DNA from: Setoptus koraiensis
Taxonomy: Eukaryota; Animalia; Arthropoda
Reading direction: 5' to 3'
DNA length: 64,000 bases
Assembly (NCBI GenBank): GCA_048013815.1
Contig: CM106585.1
Coordinates: 13,268,001-13,332,000, forward strand
Shown here one piece after another: positions 2,967-50,185 of the stretch. Made by a program: the position numbers and the translations under genes. Within the stretch, counting starts at the first letter, position 1. The number at the start of each line of letters is the position of its first letter. Below the pieces are notes generated by a model. That model saw only the letters and a program-made list of their open reading frames with translations, was not told the DNA's origin and ran no database searches.

Positions 2967-5900
2967 GGCGTGAGGATCAAAATCGACGATTCGGGCGACA
3001 TTTGGGTGAAGCGTCTAAGCAAGTGCAGCGTGTATTTGCGCAAAGTGGGCGCCTCAAACGCCAATGCCAATGCCAACAGTAGCAACAATAATAACAATTC
3101 GGCTGGAAACAGCAGCTCCAGCAGTGATTCTTACATGGCCAACAGTAGCAACAATAGTGATTTAAATGACTTTTACGGAATAGTGGGCTATCCGCCGCAC
3201 AATGCATCGTCGCACAATATTAATCAGCGCCACTCGCACAAGCTGGCGCCCGCAGACCCGTCAGCAATTGGCATTTCCGGTTCAAAGGGCCAACACAGAC
3301 AGCAGCAGCAGCAGCAGCAATCTGCTGGCGGCGCCGGCAAGCAACATGGAAATGGAAAAGTGTCCTCCAACAATCAATTTATAATGCTCAATTCGTCCAG
3401 TTCCGCCGGAAGTTCCGCATCGTCGGGCGCCGGCTCCACCTCTATCAATCAGCAGCATTCTAGCGGCAGCAAGCAACACTCAAATGCAGGCAAAAAGTCG
3501 CTCATGTCATCGTCGTCTGACATGGGACAGCAACAGGACAAAAAGGGCTCCGCTTCAAAGTTACTATCGGGCGAAATAAACAGCTACGGCTCGGTGTCGC
3601 TGGACACGGATGTGGCCCACAAAATATTTGACATGGACGCTTTCAAGCAGGCCCTGGCGCACGAGTTGCGCCAGTCGTGCCCAAACCGATGCAAACTGCT
3701 GAATTGTTGCATATCGATCATCAGTTTCGTCGTGGACGACAAAAAGTTACTCAATTTGCCCTCTTGGGTCATGATAATCAACATAGTGGCCATAGATTTG
3801 CTTAAAACGGAACTCGGTCTCACCGATCAGGATCTGCTCAATCCGATGAGCCCTGGCGCCCTGTTGGGCCAGCCATATTCGCCCTCTCAGCTGCACCGTC
3901 AGCAGCAGCAGCAGCACCACACCAACAATTTGTTTGCATATCGGGCCAGCTCGCACGCCGGCAAGAGCCGCCTAATGAACGGATCGTCGCAAGACGACGT
4001 CATGTGCGCCTCCGAAGCGGCCAACAACGACGGGCCCACAGGCAAGCCGTTTCAGCATTTGCGAACGCGCATCACAAATAATCACAAGAGGAACTTATTT
4101 AACAATATGGACGACACTTGTTTGTTTTCAAATTCGCACAACAGTCACCACAAGCAGCACAATTTCGCCAACGGCGCCAGCCATCTACTGAGAAGCTCGC
4201 TCAGTCAGGAGAATCTGCTATTGGGGTCCGAGCAGCACCATACACAACAGGGCGGTTACAATGGTTCACATGTGAATATTGGCAAAAACGGTCTTGCAGC
4301 GGCACGAAAAGCGTTTGCTGACGCGGCCGCAGCGGGAATTTACAATCAAGTCAAACTGACCTCTAACGGGCCAGACTTGGCCATGATGAACGCCAACGGC
4401 AACGGCAAGAACGGTCTGGCCCGCTACCGGAACATACAAATAATGAAGGGCGGCGCGGGCGGCGGCCATCACCAATGCGACGAAAATTGTCCCATTGCTT
4501 GCTCGCAACAACAACAATCTAAGGCGCTTTTCTCGCATCCGCACAGATTGAGCCAATCGAAGCACGACATGACCAATGTGGACGAATCGTCGGAGGGCTC
4601 GTGCTGCCTCGAGGAGCCGTGCTGCTGTCACGGGCACACAGGTGAAATGGCCCCAACAAACGGTATGGCCGGCAACGGCGACACGGCCAAGCACCATTCG
4701 TGTGCCTCAAAGAACCAGAATGGCAGCACCAGTAGCCAAAATTTATCCTCGTCGTCGGGATTCGATAGTCACAGTTCGTCGACGTTCACCACGACCGAAC
4801 AGCAGCTACTTCCGGCCGGGCAAGCCAAGACAAGCGGTGCAAAGGCGCCCGACAACAATCGGGCCGGTCAAATGGTCATGAGCCAGCAGGCAAGTCTCAG
4901 CGGGGCAGACACCACGAGCGCCTCTATTTATGGGCCCATCAAAATGTCAGCAACTAACGACGATATTGATATTATTTGCGGCGGCAAATGTTGCGATTGT
5001 CAACAGTGCACAACAGCAGCGACTAGTAACTGTTGCAACGAGCACGACAGATGCTGCCCGCAGACGGCGAGCCAGCCGGCCCAACAGCGATATTTGTCGC
5101 ACGACGACTGTGCCGGGCCGGCCGGCGAGCTGCCCGTGGCCAAGCAGCACCACAGCAAGTACCTTCATTCGGCCTACCACAACCATCATCATCATTATCA
5201 CGGGCGCACTGTTGAGCAGGGCGCCAATTTGCTGTTGGTGGCGCCCACTGGATTATCGCCACAATTGCCTACGAAGTTGGCCCATACGCCACACTTTTCT
5301 ACCATTCAGTACATAGACGGAAACGGTCAATGCAACGTGTTACATAACGACATTGCTGAGTTGAACAAGGGCAAATCGGCGCCCGAGAAAACCGGCGCCG
5401 CTGCTAGTAGCACCAGCACCAATATAAATAATGGTAACGGTTCGCCGCTGCCGCCCGGTATTCCGGCCCACGCTCAATTGGCGCCACCGGCCACACAAAA
5501 GCACATATTGCGTTACGTAATGTCGGCGGTGAAAAATGTGGCCAACGGAACGAATAAACAACAAACTGCCACAACCATGCCCGCCACGGACAACAACAAC
5601 AAACAGCAGCTCAACACCACGAGCAACTTCATCAGCAAGCAGCGACCCTTGCCTATTTTGCCCACGCAACAACAGCAACAACTGAAGCAACAGCAGCTAT
5701 TAGGCCGGCCTAGTCAGCATCAGCAGTACGCTATGGATCAAGAGGAGGACAACCTGTATTATTGTGGCCTGCAAGCTAGAGTGCCCGCATTCAGAAGGAA
5801 CCCCACGGCGGGCCAATTGTCGTCGCCGGCCAACATCAATGCAATTCTCACTGACATCAATGGGAAAATTGTTGCCAGACGAGGGGGCGCCTTCAACGGA

Positions 5901-6347
5901 TACAATCATCAATACAATAATCAAATGTATCACAGCAGTAAACATCATCATCATCATCATTATCAATTGCAACAACAATCTAATCATTTGTCTAAATCCA
6001 ATCTAGGTGGCGCAGTTTTGGGACCCAAAAACAAATTATTATTGGATCAATTGAAGATGTTGTCTAGTGTACAAAATCATCCAAATGTTTTGTCTTCTTC
6101 CTCTAATCTATTATCAAATCATCACAACTCTTTGTTCCTAAGTGCCGACAATCTGAATCATGTCCACAGATCAAATCCGTTGTTGTCCACAACAGCGGCA
6201 ACAGCAAAAACAGCAATCAGTGGAGCTAGTTCAACGAAGAAAGAGAAAAAGGGAGTTAAATTGTTTTCATTGTCGTCGTCCTCATCCTCGAACCAGTCAA
6301 CGGATCAATTGGCCTCGCAAGACCAAGAAAACAGTTCGTCCAAGCAG
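2967..6347 (+). CDS. exp: Expansion-like atypical Smad (MH2-domain) protein, main exon
   Basis: Acceptor caacag|GGC GTG after CTAAC-rich sequence; the ORF-track GTG start at 2970 is not the real start. GVRIKIDDSGDIWVKRLSKCSVYLR and KIFDMDAFKQALAHELRQSCPNRCKLLNCCISIISFVVDDKKLLNLPSWVMIINIVAIDLLKTEL match the Expansion/Rebuf MH2 C-terminal half. EDNLYYCGLQARVPAF matches the recalled Expansion C-terminal conserved motif (YYCGLxARxPxF). Donor CAG|GTGAGT at 6348. Confidence 0.88.
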
Positions 6348-6445
6348 GTGAGTTTAATATATCATAAGGTATCAAGATATCATTTTCATATCACTTTTCT
6401 CCATCATAAATCCATAATCATGCTAATGCCAATCCGTTCAATTCG

Positions 6446-6450
<5 letters not shown>

Positions 6451-6492
<42 letters not shown>
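6451..6492. repeat. (CT)n microsatellite in the last intron of exp
   Basis: Perfect TC dinucleotide run. It explains the SLSLSL read-through in the ORF track. Confidence 0.95.
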
Positions 6493-6495
<3 letters not shown>

Positions 6496-6523
6496 ATCCG
6501 AAAACTAACTCTGATAAACGCAG

Positions 6524-6571
6524 AAAGCGTCCAAATCAACGAAACGCACCAAGACGACGCGCAAAAGCTGA
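6524..6571 (+). CDS. exp: Probable terminal exon of the expansion-like gene (KASKSTKRTKTTRKS*)
   Basis: Branch-like CTAAC at about 6505 and acceptor cgcag|6524. A phase-0 join to the donor at 6348 gives a 176-nt intron. AATAAA at 6682 and 6716. Confidence 0.55.
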   Translation, partial: KASKSTKRTKTTRKS

Positions 6572-7249
6572 CTCTGGCCAATCGCTCGGACAAACAGATC
6601 GTCCACCTGACTGTTTCTCGTGTCGTATACATAAAGAAATATTGATCACTAATAGTGACAAAACGAATATATAAAAAGTGAATAAATATTGTAACCCATA
6701 GTCGTGTAGTCTGCCAATAAAATTATCTAGCTATAATCACATCAACATCATCACAATGGATTGTATATATCAGCTCTAAATCACTTCAATCTCTGATTCA
6801 CAAGTCAGTAACAGCAGCTGGATTTAATGTATCGGTTTGTGCGAGATTTGCCTAATTGATTCTGTTCGTGATTGTACTTTTAGAACTGTTGTCATCGGTT
6901 AGCACATATCGTTCTGCGAGGATACGTTGATTAGGCGATTCGCAGGATAATAAAACAAATTGTTAGTGTGTGATGTTGTTGGTGGTGCTGGCTAACACCA
7001 AGGACAGCAGCGGGGAAATCTATAAACATTATTTCGATTATCTTGATCCAAGAGCAAAGGGTTAGTGAAGTATTTCGAAGAGCGAGAATCATTTTTATCA
7101 AGATTATGATTTTATTTTTACAATCGTATCTTAATCAAACGAGATCCAAAACTGTCAGTTATATTGTATGGCGTTCATCTAATTTGAACCGGGTACTTGT
7201 ACATACCTTCGTTTCACGCCACTTGGTTGCTCGGCACCGGTTGTAGGTA

Positions 7250-11409: not shown

Positions 11410-13627
11410 TATCAATCTTGTTGTTAGTACTGTATATTTCCGAATCAATCGATCGAATCAGATCGAAGCGAACAATTCTCTAGCGAAGTTTCTCGAAAAA
11501 TGATATATCTGTCTACGTTTATCTCCTAGCACTATAACAGTAGTTCTGAACAAAGCCAGCAGTAAAATTTGCATCGGCATACGTGTCGTTATGCCGCTCT
11601 ATGCACCAAGTTGAGCGCTTCGAATACAGCGAGACTATCTACACTTTTGACAGTCGACAAGAAATAATCTATTTTCAGTTCTTTGTGTGCGAAATTCTTA
11701 ATTTAGATTCACTGTTGCGGTTTAAAAAAGTTGGTGCAAATAAATGCTACGTATCATATTAGGTTCACAGACGGGAGTGCTGGTTTCAGCCGCAGCACAG
11801 CAACACTTTTCGTCAAGTCTAGACTGTGGAAAAATTTCTGTGCGATTAAATAATGCACCATTGCAACGAGAAATTGTTTAAATATAGAATGCTGACTATT
11901 GTCGGTGCTCTGTCGCCGAGATCCACAAATTCCATATAGCCTATATGTGAGTCGCAATAGCGCCCCTGGTTCCAAAAACCAGACACTTCGGAACCTGAAA
12001 GGGGCCACAGAACTGGTAAATAGTGCTCCTTGTCTCGCCCCAAAAAGCGGCTGGTTAACCCCGTCGTTGGCGCCCCAGACATTGCCGAAAGTAGAGGTTA
12101 CTGTTAATAGTTTTGCTGTCGCAAGGGCCAGCAGAATAATTCTGTTTCGCCCATTCTATTTCTGGCTGGGTGAAAGCTCTGAAACTCGCCTGCGAACATG
12201 TCACATAAATGATTCGTTTGAGACATTTTTTTTCCCACCGAAATACCGAATTTAGCAACTTTTTCCTGAATGTTTGATGGTCGTATCGGCCGAATTTTCA
12301 CTTATCCACCGAAAAAGGTCAGGTTCTTGCACGATTTATACGGTAGAAATTCTAGCGATTTCTGACAAGTCAACCAGCCGTTCTGTCGGCCCTAGCTATC
12401 GCTAAATGTGCCAAAACTGTGGCAGAAATTAATTTCTGCCATTTGCAACCAATTTGTTTGTGCCGGGCTGTTGCAGCGTATGCGATGTTGCACGAAACTT
12501 GATATTGCACCCATTGTGTAGCTGTCATTGTTCAGACTAACCAGACTCAACAACAACAGGTTGTTCCGTTCGATCGCATCAGCAGCTTGGCAACATTGCC
12601 GAAATAAGCGGAGCTCGGTTGAAAAGGCTGCAGCAACAGCAACAGTTGCAGTTGAGCATCGCGTAACAATGCCATCGCCATCAACAGTGACATAATTGTT
12701 GTGGTTAGTGTCACAATCACGTTGAGCAGAACGGAAATGGATCGAGTTACAATGCAAACAACTTGTTCGTGGGCGACATCAGCGCGTTCGGCGTAACAAC
12801 TGCAACAAGAGCAACAAGTGCACCAACGGCGACACTGGCAACAACTGCACCAAGTGCACCAACGGCGACAGGTGAACTGAATTGACAGTGATCTCGCTGA
12901 CCGCTGCCCATTTATTTGGCAGTGACTTGCATGAAAAAATGTGATCTGTCACATCTGCAGGGCCTCGAAAAGTGGGCTATTGGTTGGCGCCGGTTTCGCG
13001 TTGGACTCATTGTGAGTCTGCTGTCATTGTCATGCAGATTGCCACAAAGTTTATGGCGTATAAACGTAATCACTTTTTGCCGTTGCCACGGTGATGCGAC
13101 AGCGACGGGCGACGGGTGTCGCCCAGGCCGATTCTTGTTTTCCTCGGCCGTGTCCGCGGGTTGCGTTTCGGATCGCGTTACGGCATGAAACTGTCAGAAG
13201 TTTCATTCATTGGCGTGATAGCCGCGCAAAAAGTGCCGCTGACGAGCCACCTAATCAACGGATTGGTGCCTGACAGGACAGAGGGTCGCCCACGGCTCGA
13301 CACATCAGCGCCATTGAACGGATTTGAATGCTCCACAAACAAAAAATCTCTCTATCTGATGTCAGCGAACGGTTCGCTGTCACATATGTTCAGCTCGCAG
13401 GGTGTGAGGCGTGTAAAAGAATGCGCGCAAATGCGGCCGAATTATGCAAATGAGCCCGTTGATCTGGCTGCTGATCGCAACAGAGTGGTTTGTTTGCGCC
13501 AGTTGTCGCACCGAGCTTCAGAGAGCCAATTCAGCCGCGAAACAGTCCGAAATGCAGCCAAATAATCAATTTTCGACCTTGTTCACACGCGCAACCCAGC
13601 CAACTGGCACCGCGTAATGTGTCAACT

Positions 13628-16600
13628 ATGTGCCAATTAATCAACAAGTCGCTCGTCGCTGTCATGAGGTCAGCAGTGTCGGATTATCGGCTCAACAGCG
13701 CACCAGCAGCAAACGACAAACTGAGAACAGCAACAAACGACAAACCAAGAACAGCAACAAACAACGAACCAAGAACAGCAACAGCGGCGCCCACGTCGAC
13801 CAATTGTCGGGCTAAATTGTTAGCGTCGCTGATCCTATTTATAATCGCCTCAATATCAACAGCATTTGCCCTCGAGAAATTTGATGCAAGTCAGCAAATT
13901 GCGCACGGTTGCGGAGAGGGCGCGCTGCAAACTTTCGAAAAGATATCAATGTCGTCATTTGAGCCGTCGCCAATTTTCATATCGTCGCCCTCGCCGTCGC
14001 CGGCGTCCGGTGTTGCCGGCAACCAGATCCACTTCGACCAGAACGGCCGAGTTTTGGCGCAGCAAGACGACCAGGCGCTCACCAGCGAGTGCGTCGAGTT
14101 GTGCAAACTGCAATCAAACTGCCTGTCGTTCGTCATCGACTACAACAAGTTCGAGTGCAAATCCTACGCCATAACCCAGCAGCAACAACAACAACAACAG
14201 CAACAACAGCAGCAACAACAGCAACAACAGCAACAACACCAGCAACACCAGCAACAACAACAACAGCAACAACAGCAGCAGCAGCAACGAACGACCGATG
14301 ACCGCGGCCGGAACCCGGCCAACGACACCCGCTCGCGACCGACCGAGCAACTGTTGCCCTCGACATCGGCCAACTATTTCGAGAAAGTGTGCCTCGGCGG
14401 CCCGAGCACCGGGCCCCAACTGGAGCGGGTGTGCGGCCCGGACCGACTGTGGGCCGTTGAGCGGGTTGTGGACGCCTTCTTGGAGGGCTACGACGAGAAA
14501 CAATTGACAAATGTCACCAGCAAGAACCAATGCTCAAGCAAATGTCTGACGGAAACGCAATTTGTTTGCCGCAGCGCCCAATACGATCAGAACACCAACG
14601 TGTGCCGACTGTCCCGAGAGGATCGCCGCAGTCAGCCGCACGCCTTCCGCACCGAAAACGCCACGGGCCGGCACTACATCGAGAATCAGTGCTGGGGCAT
14701 GTCGGCCGGGCCGGGCCCGTGCACATACGAGCCGAAACAAAACGTTGCGGTTGCCAGCATGGACGCACTCAAGCATGCTCAAAATGTCTCTGAATGCCAG
14801 ACGAAATGTTCGCGCGAACAAACGTTCAATTGTCGCTCTTATTCCTATCACAACAACAGGTGCTTCCTGTCGGGCGACGACAGCGTCAGTCTGAGGTGGC
14901 CTCTTGTGCGACTTCCGGTCAAAATCAATTGGCACTACGGAGAGCGCAAGTGCGACAAAAGCGCCGCAACAAGCACAAACAACAAGCACAATAAAGCCAA
15001 CCAAAACGATTTATTTGGTCAGACATTTTTCACAAATTATGCGCCACCAGCCAGCGCCGAACCGATTTTTTCGCCCCCAAAAGTCGCATTGGTGGCCCCA
15101 TCGGAGCCCTCTAATCACATTAACGTTTCGTCTTTGGGGCCCGCGAATTGGCAACAGCAAGCGCACACGACTTATCATGACCAATGGACGCTGCAAAAGC
15201 CACACAATGAGCCCAACAGTGATAATAATCAGCTGTCACAGGATGGCCCCTTCATCCGGCAGGCGCATCATTATTCGCCGGCGCCCACGTTGGCGCAAAC
15301 AGAGAGCTCAGTGCCACTCAATCAATTCGCTTGGACGGCCAGTTCGGAGAAACCCGGCGGCTACTCGTATGCGGCGGACAGCGGCCCGTACACGCACACC
15401 GGTGGCCAGGAGGGGCCCGGTGTCGAGACGGGCCGGTTTGGGCAGACAACGGCAAGCAATTTAGACGGTTCGAACAATGACAACAATCAGCACTCATTCG
15501 CGCTCAATGGCGACCCGACGACAAACACGCAATTGCAAACCGCCTACTATTCGCGGTACGGGGTGACGCGGTGGCCGCAAGCAGCGCCCAGCCCGCAGCA
15601 AGCAACCGGCGGCCAGCAGTTGGACCAATCGGCCAGCAGTGTTCTGTACCATCAGCAGCAAATACCCTACGACAGGCCCGCGTTGCACCAGAGCCCGAGG
15701 TGGACCCCGGGCGCGCGCAACGGCGCGCCCCAAACGAGCAACAACGACAACAACCGTATCCACTTCATCCAGCCAACAACCAGCGGACACTCGCTGGGGC
15801 ACGATTCCAGAAGCGGCCCCAGCACTGCGAACATTCCGTACAGCGGACTCGCGCCCGGATACACGAGCGTTGGCAAAGCCGCGGCCGGATATTCGAGCGC
15901 CAGCGGCAACAATTTAGTCTATTCGGCGGCCTCCATGGACGAGCCAGCGGTCTCGCCGGCGCCGCAGCAGCAAAATAGAGCGGAAAATCCGCGCTTCACA
16001 CCATCACAAATGGCCAGCCAGCATCAGCCGTTCGGAAGTCCGTGCAAGCCGGGATTCAGCAGCCTGTGGGGCAGCTCGCCGGAACTGGCGCCGGGCTTCC
16101 CTGCCAAGCACCAGGCCGATTCGCTGTACGCGAGCGGTTCGGCGCAAATTGTATCAAATTCGCTGGATGGGGCCGCCACGAATCATGGGCCGCCGTCGGT
16201 CAGGTTCAGCAAGACCGGTCCGAGCACGCGCATTAGGAGCGCGTACATTTTCCACGTGATTCGGGCCTCGTCGCTGGCCGACTGCGAGCGGGCTTGTGCC
16301 GGCTTCGCCGACCAGTGTCGGTCGTTCAACTACCGGGCTTTTTTCGAGGGCGAAAACTGCGAGCTGAGCCGTAACGATACGCGCAATTTGAAGCAACCCG
16401 TGGACAATCCGTTGTATTTCGAACAGCACGCAGCGTTTGACTATTACGAGCGCGACCCGACGACGACGGGGTCGGCCGCGTCCGCGGCGGCAGCAGCCGC
16501 CGCCTACCTGAGCGTGCCCTCGATGATGCCCGGCGCCGATTGTGCGGACGTCACGCAAACGTGCACGCCCGACGGAATGGAGTTCACGCTGCGCACCCAG

Positions 16601-17875
16601 GAACCGTTCAACGGGCGCATCTACACCTACGGTCATCACGATTCGTGTTTCTACGACGCCGAGGCCGCAACGACAAGCGTGCTCCGAATTAGCCGCACCA
16701 ACGGGTTTCCGCGTTGCGGCACCCAACAAATAGGCGACCTAATGACCAACATTGTCGTTGTTCAATTCAGCGATTACGCGCAAACAAGCCACGACAAAAA
16801 GTACAATCTCACCTGTTATTTCTCGGGCCACGGCGAGACCGTGGTGACCTCAAATTATCTGGACACCAAAATAGACGCCAGGGGGAGCCATCCGATGCAA
16901 ATAGAGCATTTGCCGCCGCAAAACGTAGTCACGTCAAATGTTGTGCTGCGCGTGTTGTACAGGGGCCAGCCGACCAACACGATAGCGCTGGGCGACTTGC
17001 TGACATTTAGATTGGAGGCGCGCGGCGCGGGCCAGCACCGATACAACGATCCGCTGAACAATGAGATATTTGCCACCAGCGTGCTGGCCAAAGATCCCTA
17101 CACCGGCCGCCAGGTTCAATTGATAGACTCGCGCGGCTGCCCGCTAGATCCCGTGTATCTGTTTCCCGAGCTGCAGAAGACGCCCGATGGCGCGCTCGAA
17201 TCGGAGTTTTATGCCTTCAAAATACCCGATTCAAACTTTTTGATATTTCAGGCTACCGTGCGAACGTGCAAGAGCCCGTGCGAGCCAATCATCTGCACCG
17301 ATGCCAAGAGCAGGCACGGCGCCCAGTCGGTGCCGTCGTGGGGCCGGCGCAGGAGACGACGACGGGACGCATCGGATGCGGAAACCGATGTTGAGCGGCT
17401 GCATACGGTGACAATACCGGCCCGGCTGAGGGGCCACTCCCATTTCAATTCTACGGCGAGCGGCCCGGCAAGCGTCGTCGATGTTCGGACGAGAAATTTA
17501 AAGCGGTCCGACGACCCAAAACGGCGCACCGACCAAAGTGAGCCGGTCGAGCACGAGATTCAGGAAATGTTCAGGGTGTACGCGTCGCGTGACCGCATTC
17601 CCGAACCCGGTTGGTTGGCCATGTCGGCGAGGGGCGACACATCCTCTGGCGACACACCCTCTGGCGGCGCACGGTCGGGCGCGGCCAAAGCGGCCAAAAC
17701 GAGAAACAGTCACAAATTGCGAGCAACCGACAGCGAGGATATTCGAGAAATGGGCACTGTTTGCCTGTCGGAATTGGGCTACTATTGCATGGTGTCCGCC
17801 ATAGTGTCCCTCTCACTGCTGATTGGCTCGATGGTGTGCGTGGCTGTTTGCCTGATGAAAAAATCACAAATTGCC
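13628..17875 (+). CDS. PAN/Apple (about 4 domains) + ZP-domain transmembrane apical-matrix protein (neyo/morpheyus/nyobe-like), exon 1
   Basis: First ATG at 13628. Hydrophobic KLLASLILFIIASISTAFA segment. PAN Cys patterns (e.g. QCSSKCLTETQFVCRSAQY, DCERACAGFADQCRSFNY). ZP domain from CADVTQTCTPDGMEFTLRT to CKSPCEPIIC, furin site R7 at 17345-17365, and TM YYCMVSAIVSLSLLIGSMVCVAVCLM. Perfect donor GCC|GTAAGT at 17876. Confidence 0.93.
14177..14287 (+). repeat. CAG/CAA polyglutamine tract (37 codons: 35 Q, 2 H) in the PAN/ZP gene
   Basis: Direct reading of the sequence. Confidence 0.95.
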
Positions 17876-17980
17876 GTAAGTTGATTGCCATTTCCGACAC
17901 TCTCCAGCGATTCGTTGCCGCCGACGAGCAACTAATTTTTTCACCTTAAACCTGACATTTCGCTTCTCGCCAATATCCAG

Positions 17981-18684: not shown

Positions 18685-21027
18685 CTATAAATTAGTTTCG
18701 GGTGGTGGTGTTATTGTGACGCTTATCACTCGTTTCGTTGGCTTGCTCGTCTTGTTGGTCGCGAGGCTGGACGGGCCGGCGCCGTAGATGCTGCCGCTGT
18801 TGTTGTTGTTGTTGTTGTTGTTGTTGTCATCCACAGGCGGCGAGTTTGTGGGCTGTCTGGGCGGTGGCTTGTGCGGCGCGGAATACACCGAGGCGGTGGA
18901 CGGGTGCTGGTGCGATTCCGCCGGCGGTTGCTGATGGGCGGCCGCGGGTGCGTTTTGGCCCGCCGTGCCGCCAGCCGGGCTGTTGGTGGTGGTGTGGGCG
19001 GTAGATGGCGCCTGCTGCTGTTGCTGCAGCGTTTCGAGCCGGATTTTCTCTAGCGACACGTCGTCGTCGTAGCACATGTCCTGGCCGCACAGGTGATCTA
19101 TGATGGCGCAACCTATTGAGTTTGCCCAAACGTTCACCAGGGTGCGGAAGCGATCCAGTATAAAATCGACAATGTATATGAGCGACAATTGTAGCACGGG
19201 CAAATCTATGGCGTTCAGCACGATCACAATGGTGAGCATTCCGCACGAGGGCACCCCGGTCGTGCTGACCGACGCCACTGAGGTGGCCAGTCCGATGACC
19301 ACAAGCGAGCCGAGCGTCAACTGAACGCCAATCAGTTGCGCAATGTACACACTGGCGACAGCCTCGTAAATGGCTGTTCCGTTCATGTTGATGATGGCGC
19401 CCAGGGGGCAGCACGATTGCACAATTTTTCTATTTATCTGATAATTGATCAGGCACTTGATTGTGATGGCCAGCGTGGCCGTGCTAGATGAGGTGGCAAA
19501 GGCCATCGCGAGCGCCTCTACCATTTGCCTGAAGAACTTCATGGGCGACTTCCGGGTGACCAGGTAGTACACGAGGGGCAGCACGAGCAGGGCGTGAAAG
19601 GTGAGCGCGCACAACACGGTCAGCGTGTACAACATGAGACTGTTGGCCATGGTGCCCAGATCCTGGGCGCGGGCTATCTGGCCCATAATTAGGAAGGGCA
19701 CGCACAGGGGCGTCAGATTGGTGAGCATGAGCGCCAGTCGGGTAGTGAGCTCCGCAACGCACCCGATCATGTCGACGAGCGGTCGGGCCGCCGGCGGGCC
19801 CATCTGCTGCAGTGTCACGCCCACCACAGTGGCCACCACCAGCAAGCCTATCACGTTGGCCCGATGCACTTGTTCCTGTTTGAAGGGCCACTCGCCAGGT
19901 GGCGGCTGCAGCCGGCCGTTGATAATGACAACGTTGGCTGGCTCCAGCAGCTTTGTGCGCGTCTGACTGACGGCCGCACCGACCGCGTTGTCGGGCACCA
20001 GGTTGCGCAACAGGTCCAACACCACGTCCACGGGTATCTCGTTGGCGGTCTTGAAGCGCTCGTTGTTGTACAGGTGATGCGTGGCCTTGGCGTGCGTCAC
20101 CAGGTTGATGGGCAGCCGGCCCGCGTCCCGGTCCCTGATGGGCCGCGTGGCGTAATTGTTGGCGCCCGGGTAGTTGTTGCTGTTGTAGTTGTAGTTGCTG
20201 TTGTAGTTGTTGTTGTTGTTGTTGTTAGTGTTGGCAGTAAATGCGGCGTTGACCAGCAGGGTGGCGCTGTCGTCGCTGAACTGGTGGTGGCGCGCCTGCT
20301 GCTGCTGCGACGGCGACGGGTAAAAGTAGGAAGTGGCACCGGAAGTGTCCGACATGGCGTCTAGGTTGTAGTCGCGGAAATGCGCCTGCGTTGGCGGACT
20401 GTGGTCGCTGATGGTGGCAAACTGTTGCTGCTCGCCGGACCCGGTTGCGTCGCCGCCGCCGCTCCGGAACAGACCGCCGGGCCGGGGCCCGAGCGAGTCC
20501 GCCGCGTCCACGTCCGCCGCCGCCGGCTGCTGCTGCGCCACGGGCCCGCCGGGCCTAATTAATATCACAAATAGCACGCCCTGCACAATGGCCAGAGCGG
20601 TGGTGAACAGGCAATAAATTGAGGCGCTCTTGCCGATGCAAATGGTAAATTTTGTTTGTAACGTGGCAAATGCCTGTGCCACATTGGATACAACGAGCGG
20701 CACAATGAGCAAATTGAGCGCGCGCACAAACAACTCGCCAGGCACCTCCAAATACATAAATTGGCGCTCGTGCCAGGACGAGGCCACCCGGCGCAACAGC
20801 AGCCCGAACACTATGGCAACCGCAATGGATATGAGCGTGGACAGGAGGAGCCAGTGGTGCGCAAACAGGGCGCACAGGCGCTTGAATTTGGAATTTCGCT
20901 CGCCAATCTCATAGTAGAATGTGATGGGACTTGTGAGCGACGTGTTCCGCTGCGACCCGTTGTTGAATTTGATGGTCTGCGCCGATCTGCACAACGAATT
21001 TCTGTGCGGCCGCGACTCGAAATTCAT
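18685..21027 (-). CDS. SLC1/EAAT-family dicarboxylate/amino acid transporter, intronless, with atypical cation-site residues
   Basis: FMYLEVPGELFVRALNLLIVPLVVS (TM2), FATSSSTATL (HP1), PLGAIINMNGTAIYEAVA (TM7), GVPSCG (HP2), VDFILDRFRTLVNV (TM8). In-frame stop just upstream of the ATG; AATAAA at 18575-18580. Confidence 0.95.
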   Translation of the reverse strand: MNFESRPHRNSLCRSAQTIKFNNGSQRNTSLTSPITFYYEIGERNSKFKRLCALFAHHWLLLSTLISIAVAIVFGLLLRRVASSWHERQFMYLEVPGELFVRALNLLIVPLVVSNVAQAFATLQTKFTICIGKSASIYCLFTTALAIVQGVLFVILIRPGGPVAQQQPAAADVDAADSLGPRPGGLFRSGGGDATGSGEQQQFATISDHSPPTQAHFRDYNLDAMSDTSGATSYFYPSPSQQQQARHHQFSDDSATLLVNAAFTANTNNNNNNNYNSNYNYNSNNYPGANNYATRPIRDRDAGRLPINLVTHAKATHHLYNNERFKTANEIPVDVVLDLLRNLVPDNAVGAAVSQTRTKLLEPANVVIINGRLQPPPGEWPFKQEQVHRANVIGLLVVATVVGVTLQQMGPPAARPLVDMIGCVAELTTRLALMLTNLTPLCVPFLIMGQIARAQDLGTMANSLMLYTLTVLCALTFHALLVLPLVYYLVTRKSPMKFFRQMVEALAMAFATSSSTATLAITIKCLINYQINRKIVQSCCPLGAIINMNGTAIYEAVASVYIAQLIGVQLTLGSLVVIGLATSVASVSTTGVPSCGMLTIVIVLNAIDLPVLQLSLIYIVDFILDRFRTLVNVWANSIGCAIIDHLCGQDMCYDDDVSLEKIRLETLQQQQQAPSTAHTTTNSPAGGTAGQNAPAAAHQQPPAESHQHPSTASVYSAPHKPPPRQPTNSPPVDDNNNNNNNNNSGSIYGAGPSSLATNKTSKPTKRVISVTITPPPETNL

Positions 21028-21037
21028 GTCGATTTAT

Positions 21038-21090
21038 CTGGCGCTTCCGGTTGCTGGCGCTTCCGGTTTGCTGGCGCTTCCGGTTTGCTG
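21038..21090. repeat. Three copies of a 16-17-bp unit (CTGGCGCTTCCGGTT[T]G) just upstream of the EAAT ATG
   Basis: Direct reading. Each copy carries an ETS-like CCGGAAG on the minus strand. Confidence 0.85.
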
Positions 21091-22584
21091 CGGCGCTCGC
21101 TAGATTTTTTTCTGTCGCTTTTTTCCGTCTGTCGCTGTCTGTCTGTGTTGTGTGTGTCGTGGCGATTCTTTGCCAAGCTGATGCGGATGTCGCACCGATG
21201 CGGTTCGTGTGATTGTGTGGTTCAGTGATTTGGTTCAGTCTTGTTGTGGTTGCTGCGGTTGATGTGGTTGAGCTTGTAGCTGCTCTAATTGCTATAATTG
21301 GGGCGCGATTTTCAACTGCACTTGGAGCGCTGGCTGGGCCGGTGGCGATTCGATGATGATTCGTGGATAAAGTTGCTGCGACGATAGGCATGCTCCAACG
21401 CTGGCGTCTAGCATCGCCGTCGGCAACATTGTGTCTACTCCAGGTCTAGCTATCCAGTTATCCAATTGTAAGCTTTTTTTCTCTCTCTCTCCCTCTCTCG
21501 CTAGTTGTCTAGTTGTGTGGCTGTTCAATTGTCTAGTCACTTGGCTGGCTGCTTTTCGTAATAATCGACTGTCTATTTCGGTTTCGTTGTCGGGGGCCTA
21601 ACGCAACAGGCCGTGACAAGCAAACATTGCAGTGTGCAAATGCGCAGTGTCGCAGTGGTTTGCGCTCAAATTCAATTAGTTTTACAATATTCACCTAATT
21701 AGAGCGGGCCCAATTGGAGGGCGATCACTGGATCACTGATGGCCTAATGTGCCCAATGAAGGGATAATTGTTGCAAAATTCGTCAGAGTAGCGAGAGTTC
21801 TAGATGTCGATGTCAACGTTGTTCAATGTCGCTCAATGGTTCACGGGCTGCGAGAACATACCAAAATAGGCGAGTATGAGCGGATAATCGACGAGCTGAA
21901 CGACGAGCCGAACGACGACAGCAACGACAAACAAAACAACTGCCAGAACGATGGTGTGGGCCAAGATAACACAACACTAGGCAAACATGTGAGTATGAAT
22001 ATGAATACGGCTGACGTAATCGTCATGCTGTTGCTGTTGTCGCCATCCGGCGACAATAGCGACAGCCAATTGGCAACAACAGCGACAACAACAATAACAA
22101 CAGCAACAGCAACAACAACTACATCAACAACGACAACAACAACGATAGCAGCAACAACAACGGCGGCGGATATTAATCTAATTTAAACATATGCAATTTG
22201 TGTGCAATGATATCATCATTACAATATTGTCATCGTTGCGATGAAGTTCTTTATAAATTAAGTGGCAACACTATTTTGCATTTCGCTGTACGCCGCCGCT
22301 TGTCAGACAGCTCAAGCTTGTTGTGACAACTTTTGTCGCAACATTACCAGCCACATCTAGTCACACAGTCTAGTTGTATTGGCTGACAGGTATCGACAAC
22401 AGCAGCAGCAACAACAAGAGATAAAATAACAACAACATGACACGGTGCACGGTATGCCCACCAAATGGGACGATAGCAATAACGACACGATTAATTAACG
22501 CCGCCGATGAATATATTAATATATATATACATACAGCGGTATTATCTGTTTGTTTTGCTCCACCGCACTGTGTCATATGTGTCG

Positions 22585-33669: not shown

Positions 33670-34732
33670 GGTCCCCTAAACAGCTGAAGAGCCCGAGAGA
33701 CGAGGAGCCGAACAGCCGAAGCTCGGCTGTAGCGCGCACAACAGCTGACAGGTGAATGACAAAGCCGCGTGTATGATAATCGAGATCGGAGAGTATCAAG
33801 TCGATCGAGTGGCCGACAATGCGATCAACACTTGACTCGACTCGAGCGGCAACAAGTGCGCCCATTGTTGCCCGTCGACGGTGGCCGCAAAGGGTGATAT
33901 ATGAATAGATGGCGGATTAACCTTTTGCGACTCACTCACACCCGATCCGATCCGACTGACTGACTGACTGGCTGGCTGGCCGTGTAATCGTATCTTGTCT
34001 TATTAGCACCTTGCGTTGCTGTCACTATCGAGCGAGTTTGCGCTCATAGTCAGGCTCATTGTCAAATTCATTCACAAGTTGCGTATCATTGCTGGCCAAA
34101 ATAGCGCCCTATTGTAGCGAGTTCACAATCGAGTTCACAATCGAGTTCTGGCATAATTAATATCACTGGGCTTGGCGGCAACCTTGAAAAAACAGATTGT
34201 TTCATTGGCAGTTGGCTGGTAATTGCATATTTGTATATCTGCCTATCTGTTGTTCATCATCTGCGCTCGCTCGTCTCCATCTCATCGAGCGCATTATCAT
34301 CTCGTATCATTGCATGTTTATCACTGCCAAGATCGCCAACAATTGCAAGATGGTCGTGCCACGATCTTGCAATTGTTGTTAGCGATCAGCTGACAACTAT
34401 CCGGCGATCAGCTGACAACGATCTTGGCGATCAGCTGACAACTTCGCTTGTGAGCGCCGATGACAATAAGAGCCAATAAGGCACACGCGCGAACACATTG
34501 CGACACACAATTGCGACATGACAGACGACGACGCATCGCGCGCTCCAATGACGAGCCAACACCTAATCATTACGCCTGACAGCTGACAGCTGATGTCGGG
34601 CACGCGATGTCGCGCCAAACAGACAGCCAGACTGACAAATAATAATAGCGCAAATAATAAACAAAAAGACGCCATGGTGCGATATGGCAATATGCAAATA
34701 TTTCAAAGGGGAGAATAGCAGCTTATAATTAC

Positions 34733-35424
34733 CGTTTGTTGCAACGCCTGCGCGTTGTTGTTAGTCTGGCCGTAACCGGCACTTATGGGCACGCCGCCCG
34801 CCGATGCGGACACGGGCGACCTTGGGTAGTCTTGGCTGGTGCCGGCGATGTTGTTGTTGTTGTTGTTGTATCGCTGCTGCTGCTGTGATCCTATCAAGGC
34901 GGGCGATGATGCAACGGGCGAACTCCTGGCGGGCGCATTGTAATTGTTGCTCTGCTGCTGCTGCTGTCTTCCGCTGCCGGCTTGGCTCGGCGATGCTTGT
35001 CGGGCCGGTTGTTGCAATTGTTGGGGGGCGCTGGCGGGCTCCGACGAGGATTTGCCCAGCTCGGCGTTGACGCTGTAAAATTGTGACGATTTTGAACAAT
35101 CAACCGAGTGCCAATAATCGCAGGCTAGAATTGCCTGATTGAACACGGTGCCTACGCCGCACAAGAACGCCTCGTGCCGGCCGCTCCAGCACACGTGATA
35201 CGCCTGACATCCGGTTTCCTCGTCGGCGTAAAAGCCAAAATCGTAGCCCTTGCCCTCGCAAGTGAACGATGTCTTGGGTATTCTCGTGTAGGCGGGAAAG
35301 TCCACGCCGGGCTTGCCCGCGACCGAGCCTGCGCGACCGCCATCGATCGTAGGTACATCGGCATTATTATCGGCATTGTTATCGTTATTATTTTCGGCAT
35401 CATCATGGGTATTGTCCATAGTGC
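34733..35424 (-). CDS. Exon 2 of the secreted chitin-binding protein, carrying the peritrophin-A/CBM14 domain
   Basis: GKPGVDFPAYTRIPKTSFTCEGKGYDFGFYADEETGCQAYHVCWSGRHEAFLCGVGTVFNQAILACDYWHSVDC: six Cys in ChtBD2 spacing (CPAP1/U-scoloptoxin-like cuticular family). The 5' boundary is uncertain (35424 or 35328). Confidence 0.9.
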
Positions 35425-47960: not shown

Positions 47961-48139
47961 CTGCATGTGGGAGAATAGTGACAACAACATTAACAATTAG
48001 TCGATTGGTTGCTGGAAAAGTGGCCAAAAATTGCCAAAAGTTGCCAAAAGTTGCCAAAAGTTGGCCCAATTTTGCAATCGGGGCAACGGGATCTTTGGAT
48101 TTTTGTATGGCTTTACAGTGGCAGTTTTGTGAGGCTTAC

Positions 48140-49109
48140 CCTTGCGTTGTGCATGCTCAGGATGTAGTTGCAATCCTTCATGTAGGCGTACAGGTCCTGG
48201 CCAACGTACTCGAACACCAGCGTCAGCTTCTCCGGCGTGTGACAAATGTCGTGCAATGTGACAATGTTGTTGTGACGCAACAATCGCAACAGCGACACCT
48301 CACGGATGGCCGTACACGGGGCGCCCTCGTCGTGTTCTTTGAGAATTTCCTTCAGTGCCACCAGCTCGTTGCTGAGCCGACTGCGGCCCTGATACACGGT
48401 GGCGTAGGTGCCCTTGCCCAGCTTTTGCAGCTTGAAATAGGACTCGATTTTGCCGTAGCCCAGGTCGGACAACGATTGCCGCTGCTCCGATCTGCTCAGT
48501 CGCCGCTGGGGCACCAAGCACACGTTGCCTGCGCCACAGTCGCCCTGCAGTGAGCCGGCCGGCGAGCTCGAGCCGCTACTGGCCACACTGCCGCTGCTGC
48601 CCTGACTGCCCCTGGCCCCCGGCCCGGAATACGCCGGCTGCGGAAGGGCGCCTGTGCCCGCCAGGCCGCTACCGAACTTGATTCTGTTGTTAACTTGTTG
48701 CTGTAATGCTAGATTTCGCGCTCTCGGCGACGAGCTGCTGCTGGCCATATCATCATTGGCCGTCACCGTCAGCGGCGAGCCCACTTTAGTGGCCGCCTTC
48801 AGCACTATTGTTCCGTCCAAATTGAGGCACGGCGTGTCGGCCACAGTGATCCGCCTAGACATGACCGCACGGGCTTGCTGCTGTTCCGGCTCGCCGGCGA
48901 CAACTTGCCCGGCCGTGTCCGCTGCCGGCTTGTTGTTTTGGTGGTTTTTGGGGTCCGGATGCTGCGCGCCCGATGCATGGCTGCTATCAACGTGGTGCGG
49001 GCTTACATCAACATTTATATTAAAGCTTGACGTTGTCGGCCTGATGGCCAGGTGAGAGGGGTGCTCGATGAAAGAGGTGGATTTGGTACGATAATTGCTA
49101 GTTTTTAAT

Positions 49110-49140
<31 letters not shown>

Positions 49141-50050
49141 CGACGTGCCCGTCGTCGTCAACTGCAACCGTCTGCGGCGCTGTTGCGCCATCAGAGAATT
49201 GGGGCGAGCCGGCCGAAAAACTAATCGACGACGACGACGAATCCGACGACGCACTGCCCAAGTTGCGCTGGTGAGCCAGTTGGTGGCTTGAGAAGCGCCC
49301 GCTACTCAATAGAGAATCATAGGAGCCAACTACCTCTTGGCATGAGGCCGACACGACCATGCTAGAACGGGGCGATGGCGTTCTGTTGGCCGATTTGCAT
49401 TGGCTCACGCAGGGCAAGTCGCGAAGCTCGTCGTTGTCGCCGTCGTCGTCCACCAAATCATTCTCTTCCTCTTCGTTGAACGACGACGACGGCGACGTTG
49501 AACCCGTCAGGGGCGATCTGATGTGAAATCTCGACAACGGGCCCATTGGCGACAATCGGTCAGTGGGACTGCCCTTGATGATCCTCTTGTTGTTTGCGCC
49601 GGCGGCGCCATTTATTTGGATAGGCAAAGAGTGTGGCCTCAGTTGGGCCGCCTCGTTGGCTTTGCTGTTGTTGCTGCTTTTCAGCTTCATGGCCTTAATA
49701 GACTGCGTGATGTGATAAAAGGGAAACTGATCCAGTTTGTTGCTCTGTTTCAAACAGTTGGTCAGTCGATCGGCCTCGCATCGCATCTGCTGCTTGGCGT
49801 CTGAACTGCTGTTGTTGTTGTTAATTGTTGTGATTGATGTTTCATTGTTGTTGACAACGGTGCTATCGTTGTTGTTTGTTTTAACTGATGCATAACGGTG
49901 TAGGTGATCCATTTTTGTTTGAATCTCATCGAGGTTGTTGTTGTTGCTGTTGTTGTTGTTGTTGTTGTTGTTTATCTCGTTGTGTGATATAGTTGCGTTG
50001 ATTGTTGGTGAGACAAATGTTGTCGCCTCTCGTTCACTGTATCTACCCAT
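48140..50050 (-). CDS. CDK16: PCTAIRE-type CDK, exon 1 (long low-complexity N-terminus + kinase N-lobe)
   Basis: [51 protein letters not shown] (PCTAIRE, not PFTAIRE). Donor AGG|GTAAGC at 48139 and a 179-nt intron in phase 0. The start is uncertain: ATG at 50050 or an upstream exon. Confidence 0.93.
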
Positions 50051-50185
50051 CACTAGCGATGATTTTGTATTGTCGTGTCGTTGTTGTATATGTCAAATAT
50101 ATGTATCAGCAATGACCATTTATTACTTCTGTCGAGCACATAAATTTTGTTGAGTTAGTAATGATATAGAATGCTAATAGAAATG

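What the first reader, a model, noticed from the sequence alone, without database searches (positions are those of the whole stretch)
19090..20650. EAAT with all three Na+ sites altered but the glutamate/aspartate site intact
Seen: TM7 reads GAIINMNGT (canonical GATINMDGT); the Asp is AAC/Asn at 19381-19383 and the Thr is Ile at 19393-19395. TM8 reads NVWANSIG (canonical NVxGD), with Asn at 19120-19122. TM3 reads YCLFTT (canonical YYxxTT/S). HP2 reads SVSTTGVP (canonical SIGAAGVP). Established (GltPh numbering): D312 and Y89 belong to Na3, D405 to Na1 and T308 to Na2. Asn at 405 is typical of H+-coupled bacterial GltP/DctA, and D-to-N mutants at these positions cripple Na+ coupling in mammalian EAATs. 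Substrate ligands are retained: HP1 SSS, T314, D394, R397, T398, N401 and the TM7 proton-acceptor Glu (YEA). Inference: a Na+-independent SLC1 (H+- or K+-coupled, or an exchanger), or a substrate-gated anion channel or sensor. This could be an adaptation to a low-Na+ plant diet if the host is a phytophagous mite.
Basis: partly seen in the sequence, partly recalled or inferred. Interest (0 to 1): 0.82.

Follow-up and report, generated by a model that had tools for sequence, protein, structure and literature searches.

The report
Mite glutamate-transporter relative lacking cation-site aspartates
This is an intact, conserved gene for a glutamate/aspartate-transporter-like protein from a mite-specific subfamily that has lost the two buried acidic residues that normally bind sodium and potassium. 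It probably moves acidic amino acids without the usual ion coupling, but nobody has tested this.

Summary
A single uninterrupted 780-aa ORF (18685-21027, minus strand) encodes an SLC1/EAAT-fold protein. It has Asn at both cation-site aspartates (GltPh D312 = N549, D405 = N636), and it also carries T308I, Y89C and a changed HP2 tip. All acidic-substrate ligands and the proton-acceptor Glu are kept. Contigs of four public runs from four samples show the same codons.

It is not a one-off. It is the earliest-branching member of a well-supported mite-specific clade (22 other sequences in the tree, including Aceria tosichella A0A6G1SCM2). All 22 others checked, and one further metagenome member (L011), have NMNGT and lack D405 (Gly in 15 of 18 aligned, else Ala or Ser).

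Clade members also share:
- conserved N- and C-terminal motifs that AlphaFold2 models as strands
- a long disordered insert between TM3 and TM4
- changes at anion-pathway residues in TM2

Core dN/dS among close clade members is 0.02-0.045. The window protein breaks only 2 of 45 family-wide conserved columns.

"All three Na+ sites altered" is overstated, because Na2 and Y89 bind through backbone atoms. K+ coupling is unlikely, because the K1 site uses the same two aspartates.

The most likely function is an acidic amino-acid carrier independent of Na+ and K+, either H+-coupled or facilitative. This is inferred, not shown. D312N alone is common in nature.

The parts
18685..21027 (-). Complete single-exon CDS of 780 codons plus stop for an SLC1/EAAT-fold protein.
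   Evidence: ORF list. Pfam SDF E 2.5e-74. EAAT1 E 1.3e-82. It aligns end to end with clade members from the N-terminal to the C-terminal motif. The AF2 core has pLDDT mostly above 85, and Foldseek gives TMt 0.92 to inward-facing EAAT3.
20905..20928 (-). Clade-specific N-terminal cytoplasmic motif PITFYYEI (residues 34-41). Residues 35-40 are predicted as a beta strand.
   Evidence: The motif P(V/I)TF.Y.I is present in every clade member with a complete N-terminus, including the degenerate P0304. DSSP strand E35-40 in the AF2 model. The same strand appears in P0016.
20656..20685 (-). TM2 segment with N115 (EAAT1 S103) and Q124 (EAAT1 D112). Both differ from the canonical state in the whole clade.
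   Evidence: Canonical S is 100% and D is 91%; the clade has N in 19 of 19 and Q/H/K/E. EAAT1 numbering was counted from the alignment. The role of S103/S65 in anion permeation is from PMC5472439. The role of D112 is from my own knowledge.
20599..20616 (-). TM3 YCLFTT (Y138-T143). C139 corresponds to GltPh Y89, and T142/T143 correspond to T92/S93 of Na3 and are kept.
   Evidence: Y139C is one of only two departures of this protein from columns that are at least 95% conserved family-wide. The rest of the clade reads LYLGSN (T92S, S93N).
20038..20547 (-). Low-complexity insert of about 170 aa, rich in A, N, Q and S, between TM3 and TM4a. By SLC1 topology it is extracellular. It is disordered.
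   Evidence: Absent from canonical EAATs and present at variable length in all clade members. pLDDT below 50 for residues 182-327. One run carries an in-frame 3-nt deletion at 20499.
19468..19491 (-). HP1 tip SSSTATLA (S513-A520). The substrate-contacting serines are kept. S279 becomes T and P283 becomes A.
   Evidence: S514 and S515 are invariant across all aligned sequences.
19363..19401 (-). TM7 GAIINMNGTAIYE (G543-E555): T308I (I545), N310 kept, M311 kept, D312N (N549, AAC at 19381-19383), T314 kept, Y317 kept, and E555 corresponding to EAAT3 E373.
   Evidence: No variant was seen in the contigs of four runs. NMNGT is present in all 23 clade members listed.
19249..19272 (-). HP2 tip SVSTTGVP (S586-P593). 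G351S and A353T relative to GltPh; G to S and A to T relative to the canonical metazoan SIGAAGIP.
   Evidence: Canonical G and A are 100%; the clade has S and T in 19 of 19.
19120..19167 (-). TM8 DFILDRFRTLVNVWAN (D621-N636). D390, D394, R397, T398 and N401 are kept. W to F (F622), G404A, and D405N (N636, AAC at 19120-19122).
   Evidence: The other clade members have S/T then G (or A, S) in place of G-D.
18703..18729 (-). Clade-specific C-terminal cytoplasmic motif VISVTITPP (residues 767-775). Residues 767-772 are predicted as a beta strand, probably paired with the N-terminal motif.
   Evidence: The motif is in every clade member with a complete C-terminus and in P0304. DSSP strand E767-772. 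P0016 has E647-652.

Best explanation
The gene encodes a functional member of a mite-specific subfamily of the SLC1 (EAAT/ASCT/GltPh) elevator-type transporters. It branches first among the known members.

Shown:
- The fold, the two hairpins, and every side chain that binds an acidic amino acid are kept: HP1 serines, T314, D394, R397, T398 and N401.
- The proton-acceptor Glu (EAAT3 E373) and M311 are also kept.
- The two buried carboxylates that make Na3, Na1 and the K1 potassium site are neutralised: D312N, and D405N here (mostly Gly in the relatives).

Inferred:
- The protein still binds and carries glutamate or aspartate, but without the canonical 3 Na+ in / 1 K+ out cycle.
- With two fewer buried negative charges, the empty transport domain can return without K+, and the substrate site no longer needs Na+ at Na1 and Na3 to form.
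- Transport would therefore be facilitative, or an exchange, or driven by the retained protonatable Glu (H+ symport).
- The changes in TM2 (S103N, D112Q) and at the HP2 tip suggest that the gating and the anion leak were retuned at the same time.
For: Identity and integrity:
- Pfam SDF, EAAT1 E 1.3e-82, AF2 plus Foldseek TMt 0.92-0.94 to inward-facing EAAT3 and ASCT2.
- Only 2 of 45 family-wide conserved columns are broken, against 25 of 45 in the degenerate relative P0304 and 0-7 in ordinary members.
- The codons are the same in contigs of four runs. The only differences seen are synonymous, conservative or in-frame.

Subfamily:
- The clade is monophyletic with 100/100 support, and the window protein is sister to the rest with 100/99.
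- All members have NMNGT and lack D405.
- Core dN/dS is 0.02-0.045 between close members.

Mechanism:
- The K1 site uses the D312 and D405 carboxylates. D312N and D405N lose 40 and 84 kJ/mol of K+ binding energy. EAAT2 D399N and D486N reach the membrane, respond to glutamate and are K+-independent (PMC6769379).
- EAAC1 D454N has under 5% of transport current but normal exchange-mode currents. D367N mainly affects Na+ binding to the empty carrier (PMC2151618).
- Bacterial homologues became Na+-independent and then H+-coupled, with D405N as one signature (PMC12668577).
- The Glu at the EAAT3 E373 position is invariant in the clade.
Against: - No functional data exist for any member, and expression of this gene was not shown. 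No run that holds it is identified as RNA.
- Asn carbonyls can still coordinate Na+, and D405N GltPh still transports.
- Na2 ligands cannot be judged from sequence, so some Na+ dependence may remain.
- The bacterial H+-coupled signature is met only at D405N. T92 hydrophobic, M311L and S279E are not met.
- D312N with an intact D405 is widespread in other eukaryotes and prokaryotes, so D312N alone does not prove loss of Na+ coupling.
- Whether the same genome also has a canonical EAAT is unknown.
Confidence: 0.45

Rival explanations
1. It is still a Na+-coupled glutamate/aspartate transporter with lower stoichiometry or affinity. It would use Na2 and Asn-carbonyl versions of Na1 and Na3, without K+ counter-transport.
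For: M311, N310, T92, T93 and N401 are kept. D405N GltPh transports (PMC6769379). Many natural homologues carry NMNGT with an intact D405, which suggests D312N is compatible with some working cycle.
Against: Both carboxylates are gone together. In most of the clade, position 405 is Gly, which offers no side-chain ligand. EAAC1 D454N and D367N cripple net transport. The clade also changes T92S and S93N.
Confidence: 0.2
2. It is mainly a substrate-gated anion channel or a glutamate sensor with little net transport, an extreme form of EAAT4/EAAT5-like behaviour.
For: D-to-N mutants of EAAT2 and EAAC1 keep glutamate-modulated anion currents while net transport is lost. The TM2 residues tied to anion permeation (EAAT1 S103, D112) are systematically changed in the clade. 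The conserved cytoplasmic end motifs could serve signalling or anchoring.
Against: In canonical EAATs the anion channel is opened by Na+ and substrate binding, and the Na+ sites are altered here. S103 replacement reduces rather than enhances anion flux in the cited work. No data exist for N at this position.
Confidence: 0.17
3. It is a K+-coupled transporter adapted to K+-rich, Na+-poor plant food.
For: The relatives come from plant-feeding eriophyoid mites.
Against: The K1 site needs the D312 and D405 carboxylates, and their neutralisation abolishes K+ effects. The plant-feeding spider mite keeps the canonical residues (P0025).
Confidence: 0.04
4. It is a decaying or non-transporting copy (pseudo-transporter), or the substitutions are assembly errors.
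For: A relative, P0304, has lost NMxGT and DRFRT, so degeneration does happen in this group. The window protein sits on a long branch (1.93) with an atypical composition.
Against: The ORF is intact at 780 aa. 43 of 45 universal columns are kept. All substrate ligands are kept. Four runs give identical codons, and the only differences are synonymous, conservative or in-frame. The same losses are conserved in a clade with dN/dS 0.02-0.045.
Confidence: 0.05

Closest known systems
Metazoan excitatory amino acid transporters (EAAT1-3; solved structures 5llu, 6x2l, 7xr4)
   Same: Same fold and domain order. About 26% identity over the structural (Foldseek) alignments to EAAT1-3, with TMt 0.92. HP1 SSS, N310, M311, T314, Y317, E373, D390, D394, the R477/R479 pair (EAAT1 numbering), T398 and N401 are all kept.
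   Different: D312N and D405N remove the carboxylates of Na3, Na1 and K1. Other differences are T308I, Y89C, HP2 tip G to S and A to T, W to F before DRFRT, TM2 S103N and D112Q, an extracellular insert of about 170 aa between TM3 and TM4a, and conserved N- and C-terminal strand motifs.
Mite-specific SLC1 clade P0001-P0023, including Aceria tosichella A0A6G1SCM2 (uncharacterised)
   Same: NMNGT, loss of D405, HP2 S-T tip, S103N, W to F, G442C, the TM3-TM4 insert, the N-terminal P(V/I)TF.Y.I motif and the C-terminal (V/I)ISVTITPP motif. Clade support is 100/100.
   Different: The window protein is only 44-52% identical in the core, against 62-98% among the others. It keeps canonical T92/T93, A307, I309, G150 and G639 where the others have S/N, S, F, A and V. 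It has N rather than G at 405, and uniquely Y89C. It lacks the loop motif RYREYHPMFYH. It does not share their neighbouring genes, where SDF is followed by ASC.
Bacterial H+-coupled GltP/DctA-type carriers and the reconstructed Na+-independent intermediate (PMC12668577)
   Same: They are a precedent for a switch away from Na+ coupling within this fold. D405N is shared with the window protein.
   Different: The bacterial signature also has a hydrophobic residue at T92, M311L and S279E, and it keeps D312. None of these holds here. NCBIfam GltP and DctA models score far below their cut-offs.
Other natural SLC1 proteins with altered cation sites
   Same: D312N with D405 kept occurs in nematodes, Seison, Macrostomum, green algae, amoebae, Physarum and many prokaryotes. 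Bivalve glt-6-like proteins have D312N/S plus D405H/Q. A hard-tick 'EAAT2' cluster has D405Q with M311L.
   Different: They are separate lineages without the mite-clade hallmarks. The tick and bivalve proteins also change N310, M311 or D394, so their substrate sites are not intact. None is characterised, to my knowledge.

Membership tests
SLC1 / DAACS (Pfam SDF PF00375) fold family | Significant match to the family profile over both halves | tested here: met
   PF00375 E 2.5e-74 at 251 bits, against a cut-off of 27.9. 45 PDB sequences at E <= 1e-3, all from SLC1 or GltPh/GltTk.
SLC1 / DAACS (Pfam SDF PF00375) fold family | Eight TM helices plus two re-entrant hairpins, elevator architecture | tested here: met
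   AF2 model with core pLDDT mostly above 85. Foldseek TMt 0.92-0.94 to inward-facing EAAT3 and ASCT2.
SLC1 / DAACS (Pfam SDF PF00375) fold family | Signature NMDGT in the unwound part of TM7 | tested here: not met
   It reads NMNGT (N549, AAC 19381-19383). This variant is also found in many other natural members.
Canonical Na+/H+/K+-coupled EAAT (functional class) | Na3 ligands: D312 carboxylate, N310, T92, S/T93 (Y89 through its backbone) | tested here: not met
   D312 is N. N310, T92 and T93 are kept. Y89 is C.
Canonical Na+/H+/K+-coupled EAAT (functional class) | Na1 ligand: D405 carboxylate in the NVxGD motif | tested here: not met
   NVWAN: G404A and D405N.
Canonical Na+/H+/K+-coupled EAAT (functional class) | Na2: M311 sulfur plus backbone carbonyls of T308 and the HP2 tip | tested here: inconclusive
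   M311 is kept. T308I and the HP2 tip changes G351S and A353T alter side chains only, and the geometry cannot be judged from sequence.
Canonical Na+/H+/K+-coupled EAAT (functional class) | K1 potassium site formed by the D312 and D405 carboxylates | tested here: not met
   Both are Asn. The site definition and mutant data are from PMC6769379.
Canonical Na+/H+/K+-coupled EAAT (functional class) | Proton-acceptor Glu (EAAT3 E373) and acidic-substrate Arg (R447/R397) with D394, T398 and N401 | tested here: met
   E555, R628, D625, T629 and N632.
Canonical Na+/H+/K+-coupled EAAT (functional class) | Na+-dependent, K+-stimulated concentrative glutamate uptake | not testable with these tools
   Needs expression and flux or current measurements.
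Bacterial H+-coupled glutamate/dicarboxylate carriers (signature of PMC12668577) | [T/S]92 hydrophobic, M311L, D405N and S279E | tested here: not met
   Only D405N is present. T92 is T, M311 is M and S279 is T. NCBIfam GltP scores 116.7 bits against a cut-off of 638.
ASCT-type neutral amino-acid exchangers | R447 replaced by Cys/Thr and E373 replaced by Gln (from my own knowledge of ASCT1/2) | tested here: not met
   R628 and E555 are kept.
Mite-specific SLC1 subfamily (defined here) | NMNGT plus loss of D405. N-terminal P(V/I)TF.Y.I and C-terminal (V/I)ISVTITPP motifs. TM3-TM4 insert. S103N, W622F, HP2 S-T tip. | tested here: met
   All are present in the window protein. It groups with the clade at 100/100 support.

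The most novel reading that the evidence does not exclude
A whole lineage of animals (eriophyoid-type mites) has turned an EAAT-type neurotransmitter/amino-acid transporter into a carrier independent of Na+ and K+, either H+-coupled or facilitative. It did so by neutralising both buried cation-site aspartates while keeping the glutamate site. This would be a metazoan parallel to the bacterial switch from Na+ to H+ coupling. The window protein would preserve an early step of that path: N/N with T92 and T93 still canonical. The subfamily would also have gained a new cytoplasmic clasp in which the N- and C-terminal strands pair, joining the scaffold and transport domains.
Probability: 0.35. Interest if true: 0.72.

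Novelty: new variant of a known kind. Interest (0 to 1): 0.55.

Why it matters
D312 and D405 (EAAT1 D400 and D487) are treated as the core of Na+ and K+ coupling in glutamate transporters, and what is known about them comes from mutants that cripple transport.

Here nature supplies a strongly conserved animal subfamily that lacks both residues yet keeps the glutamate-binding residues. The window protein is a less-derived branch and the main clade a more derived one, so together they offer a stepwise series.

Expressing these proteins would show directly whether an EAAT scaffold can work without Na+ and K+, and which compensating changes allow it. It would also show how tiny plant-cell-feeding mites handle glutamate.

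The same survey shows that altered cation sites in invertebrate SLC1 paralogues (ticks, bivalves, nematodes) are more common than the standard picture suggests.

Tried and rejected
1. Sequencing or assembly error: rejected. Contigs of four runs agree at the three codons.

2. Hidden intron in the 170-aa insert: rejected. Every clade member has an insert there, one run carries an in-frame indel in it, and the ORF aligns end to end.

3. Closer orthologues of the window type: none found. The word-indexed protein search and the exhaustive representative search found none. The metagenome scan with the protein itself found none. The scan with the clade alignment gave only main-clade members (L011-L013) plus prokaryotic NMNGT homologues. 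As a result, dN/dS on the window's own branch could not be measured, because dS against the clade is saturated.

4. Synteny with the main clade (SDF, ASC, RRM) or with P0304's locus: none in the 64-kb window. Orthologue versus old paralogue is therefore undecided.

5. Canonical EAAT in eriophyoids: a search with P0024 returned only other arthropods among the best 120 hits. P0024 is itself a generic chelicerate-like EAAT. Whether these mites also keep a canonical EAAT is unresolved.

6. RNA evidence: the single run search was made with kind 'any', and no run that holds the gene is identified as RNA. Expression is untested.

7. Literature: no paper links eriophyoids to glutamate transporters. 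The Aculops genome paper does not mention SLC1. 'NMNGT' gives no relevant paper.

8. ESM Atlas and NCBIfam added nothing beyond the SDF family.

9. The bacterial promoter/terminator scan is irrelevant for a eukaryotic gene.

10. The third protein-database search was left unused. Naming the organism more precisely would not change the verdict.
Full report
**1. What is there**

The region lies inside one uninterrupted ORF on the minus strand, 18685..21027, of 780 aa. It matches Pfam SDF (PF00375) at E 2.5e-74. Its best solved relatives are human EAAT1, EAAT3 and EAAT2, then ASCT1/2 and GltPh/GltTk, with EAAT1cryst at E 1.3e-82.

An AlphaFold2 model built on a 54-sequence alignment has a confident core, with pLDDT mostly above 85. 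It superposes on inward-facing EAAT3 and ASCT2 with TMt 0.92-0.94.

Other ORFs in the window carry cuticlin/PAN and peritrophin-A chitin-binding domains, so the host is an arthropod. The scan's index describes a genome of about 775 windows on two pieces. The best named homologue is from the eriophyoid mite Aceria tosichella. A tiny-genome acariform mite is therefore likely, though I did not prove the species.

**2.

The HMMER alignment to EAAT1 and my alignments show these motifs:

| Element | Window protein | Canonical |
|---|---|---|
| TM7 | GAIINMNGT | GATINMDGT |
| TM8 | NVWANS | NVLGDA |
| TM3 | YCLFTT | YYMSTT |
| HP2 | SVSTTGVP | SIGAAGIP |

The codons are exactly at the stated coordinates: N549 AAC at 19381-19383, I545 ATC at 19393-19395 and N636 AAC at 19120-19122.

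The substrate ligands are kept: HP1 S513-S515, T551, D625, R628, T629 and N632. Y554, E555 (EAAT3 E373) and M548 (M311) are also kept.

Contigs of four public runs from four samples agree at all these codons. The only differences in 2.8 kb are T681T, V557V, L54M and one in-frame 3-nt deletion in the loop. These are assembled contigs rather than raw reads.

**3. It belongs to a conserved subfamily**

A protein search returned 23 sequences at 45-53% identity over the transport-domain region, residues 380-660 (P0001-P0023, one named Aceria tosichella A0A6G1SCM2). All carry NMNGT and NVW(S/T)(G/A/S), that is D312N and no Asp at position 405.

In a maximum-likelihood tree, the window protein plus these sequences form a clade with 100/100 support. 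The window protein is sister to all the others (100/99), and the clade sits among arthropod EAATs. The others are 62-98% identical to each other in the core, but only 44-52% identical to the window protein.

The exhaustive representative search shows a large score gap after the clade, from 780 to 375 bits.

Features shared by the clade and absent from canonical EAATs:
- N-terminal motif P(V/I)TF.Y.I
- C-terminal motif (V/I)ISVTITPP
- a long disordered insert between TM3 and TM4a
- TM2 S103N and D112Q (EAAT1 numbering)
- G442C
- HP2 tip G to S and A to T
- Q to S after the HP2 proline
- W to F before DRFRT

Where the main clade has further derived states, the window protein keeps the canonical one. 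These states are T92S, S93N, A307S, I309F, G150A and G639V. The window protein has N rather than G at 405. It therefore looks like an early branch that records the first steps.

Its neighbouring genes differ from those of two main-clade loci. I cannot say whether it is the orthologue in a deep lineage or an old paralogue.

**4. Selection**

Core dN/dS between close main-clade genes is 0.02-0.045 at dS of about 1.

For the window's own branch, dS is saturated, so I used another test. Of 45 alignment columns that are at least 95% conserved across clade and canonical sequences, the window protein departs at 2 (Y139C and F561Y). Ordinary members depart at 0-7. A degenerate relative, P0304, departs at 25; it keeps both terminal motifs but has lost NMxGT and DRFRT.

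The gene is not decaying.

**5. How unusual are the substitutions**

The table gives the D312/D405 states among about 155 nearest 50%-identity representatives and reference sequences.

| D312 / D405 | Count | Notes |
|---|---|---|
| D / D | 103 | canonical |
| N / D | 20 | nematodes, Seison, Macrostomum, green algae, amoebae, Physarum, a planctomycete |
| D / N | 3 | not examined further |
| N / G | 3 | mite clade representatives |
| N / N | 1 | the window protein only |
| N / H | 2 | bivalve glt-6-like proteins (P0319, P0323) |
| S / Q | 1 | bivalve glt-6-like protein (P0333) |

Many prokaryotic metagenome homologues read GATINMNGTAIY with NVTGD. A 37-member hard-tick cluster has NLDGT with D405Q and D394N.

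D312N alone is therefore common and uncharacterised. The double neutralisation combined with an intact acidic-substrate site is, in this sample, confined to the mite clade.

**6. Mechanism**

This section combines established knowledge with the papers I read.

- *Na+ sites.* Na1 and Na3 binding reshapes the NMD loop and forms the high-affinity substrate site (PMC12668577).
- *K+ site.* The K1 site is coordinated by the D312 and D405 carboxylates. D312N and D405N cost 40 and 84 kJ/mol of K+ binding energy. EAAT2 D399N and D486N reach the membrane and respond to glutamate, but are K+-independent. D405N GltPh still transports (PMC6769379).
- *Mammalian mutants.* EAAC1 D454N has under 5% of transport current with normal exchange-mode anion current. 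D367N mainly weakens Na+ binding to the empty carrier (PMC2151618).
- *Bacterial precedent.* Bacterial homologues first became Na+-independent through allosteric changes. They then acquired the H+-coupled signature: T92 hydrophobic, M311L, D405N and S279E.

The window protein shares only D405N with that signature. It keeps the protonatable Glu.

My reading (inference) is that removing two buried negative charges lets the substrate site form, and the empty domain return, without Na+ or K+. That would leave a facilitative, exchanging or H+-driven Glu/Asp carrier. I put this at about 0.45.

Residual Na+ coupling through Na2 and the Asn carbonyls is about 0.2. A mainly channel or sensor role is about 0.17. 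K+ coupling and decay are each about 0.05 or less.

The TM2 changes touch a residue (S103/S65) reported to affect anion permeation, although its direct role is debated (PMC5472439).

**7.

- Na2 and the Y89 contribution to Na3 come from backbone atoms (my own knowledge of the GltPh/GltTk structures), so T308I and Y89C delete no ligand. "All three sites altered" is too strong.
- K+ coupling is disfavoured by the K1 data.
- The diet hypothesis is untested, and the spider mite keeps the canonical residues.

**8. An extra feature**

In AF2 models of both the window protein and P0016, the conserved N- and C-terminal motifs are each six-residue strands. These are residues 35-40 and 767-772 in the window protein, and 26-31 and 647-652 in P0016. 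Their pLDDT is 65-79, amid disordered tails.

Both ends are cytoplasmic, and the only other strands are in the extracellular TM4 loop. They most likely pair with each other (inference; I could not inspect contacts). The pairing would link TM1 of the scaffold to TM8 of the transport domain.

**9. Limits**

- There is no functional test and no RNA evidence.
- No raw reads were examined.
- I do not know whether a canonical EAAT coexists in this genome.
- No close orthologue of the window type was found.

Noticed in passing
window 20905-20928 and 18703-18729; P0016 residues 26-31 and 647-652: The clade-specific N-terminal (ITFYYE) and C-terminal (VISVTI) motifs are each predicted as six-residue beta strands in two independent AF2 models. 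They probably pair on the cytoplasmic face. Both motifs survive even in the degenerate relative P0304.
   Followed up: partly
L006:10001-12277 (P0304, Logan SRR33927463): A 758-aa relative from a compact AT-rich genome keeps the terminal motifs and the insert, but has lost NMxGT, DRFRT and 25 of 45 universally conserved columns. It is a likely pseudo-transporter within the same mite group.
   Followed up: partly
P0268 cluster (hard ticks, annotated EAAT2); P0319, P0323, P0333 (bivalves, glt-6-like): Other invertebrate SLC1 paralogues also have altered cation sites. Ticks have NLDGT, D405Q, D394N and E373A. Bivalves have D312N/S with D405H/Q and changed N310/M311.
   Followed up: no
L014-L090 (metagenome contigs), e.g. 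L022:3584-4816: Many prokaryotic homologues read GATINMNGTAIY with NVTGD (D312N with D405 kept). They score below every NCBIfam cut-off. This is an uncharacterised but common variant of the family signature.
   Followed up: partly
main-clade proteins, TM3-TM4 insert (e.g. P0001, P0016): A conserved His/Tyr-rich motif, RYREYHPMFYH, sits in the otherwise variable extracellular insert of most main-clade members. The window protein lacks it.
   Followed up: no
window 20499; 18784-18836; 20168-20238: One run (X5) has an in-frame 3-nt deletion in the loop region. Logan contigs break at the two AAC/CAG-type repeat stretches that encode the poly-N and poly-Q runs.
   Followed up: no
window 20676-21300 in run X5: Depth in run X5 is very uneven across the gene: 52-140 at the 5' end and upstream, 2-10 elsewhere, and none at 19910-20285. 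The run's kind is unknown, so it may be RNA or a low-coverage mixed sample.
   Followed up: no
window 13490-17884 (+), 34703-35419 (-), 48113-50053 (-), 2970-6674 (+): Neighbouring long ORFs are: a 1464-aa PAN plus cuticlin-N protein convergent with the transporter gene, a peritrophin-A chitin-binding protein, a protein-kinase exon, and a 1234-aa ORF with a weak MH2 hit that is below the Pfam cut-off.
   Followed up: no
L001:8048-9424, L005:3280-4620: In two main-clade species the transporter gene is followed by a convergent DEG/ENaC (ASC) channel gene and an RRM gene. This local gene order is conserved there but absent from the window.
   Followed up: partly
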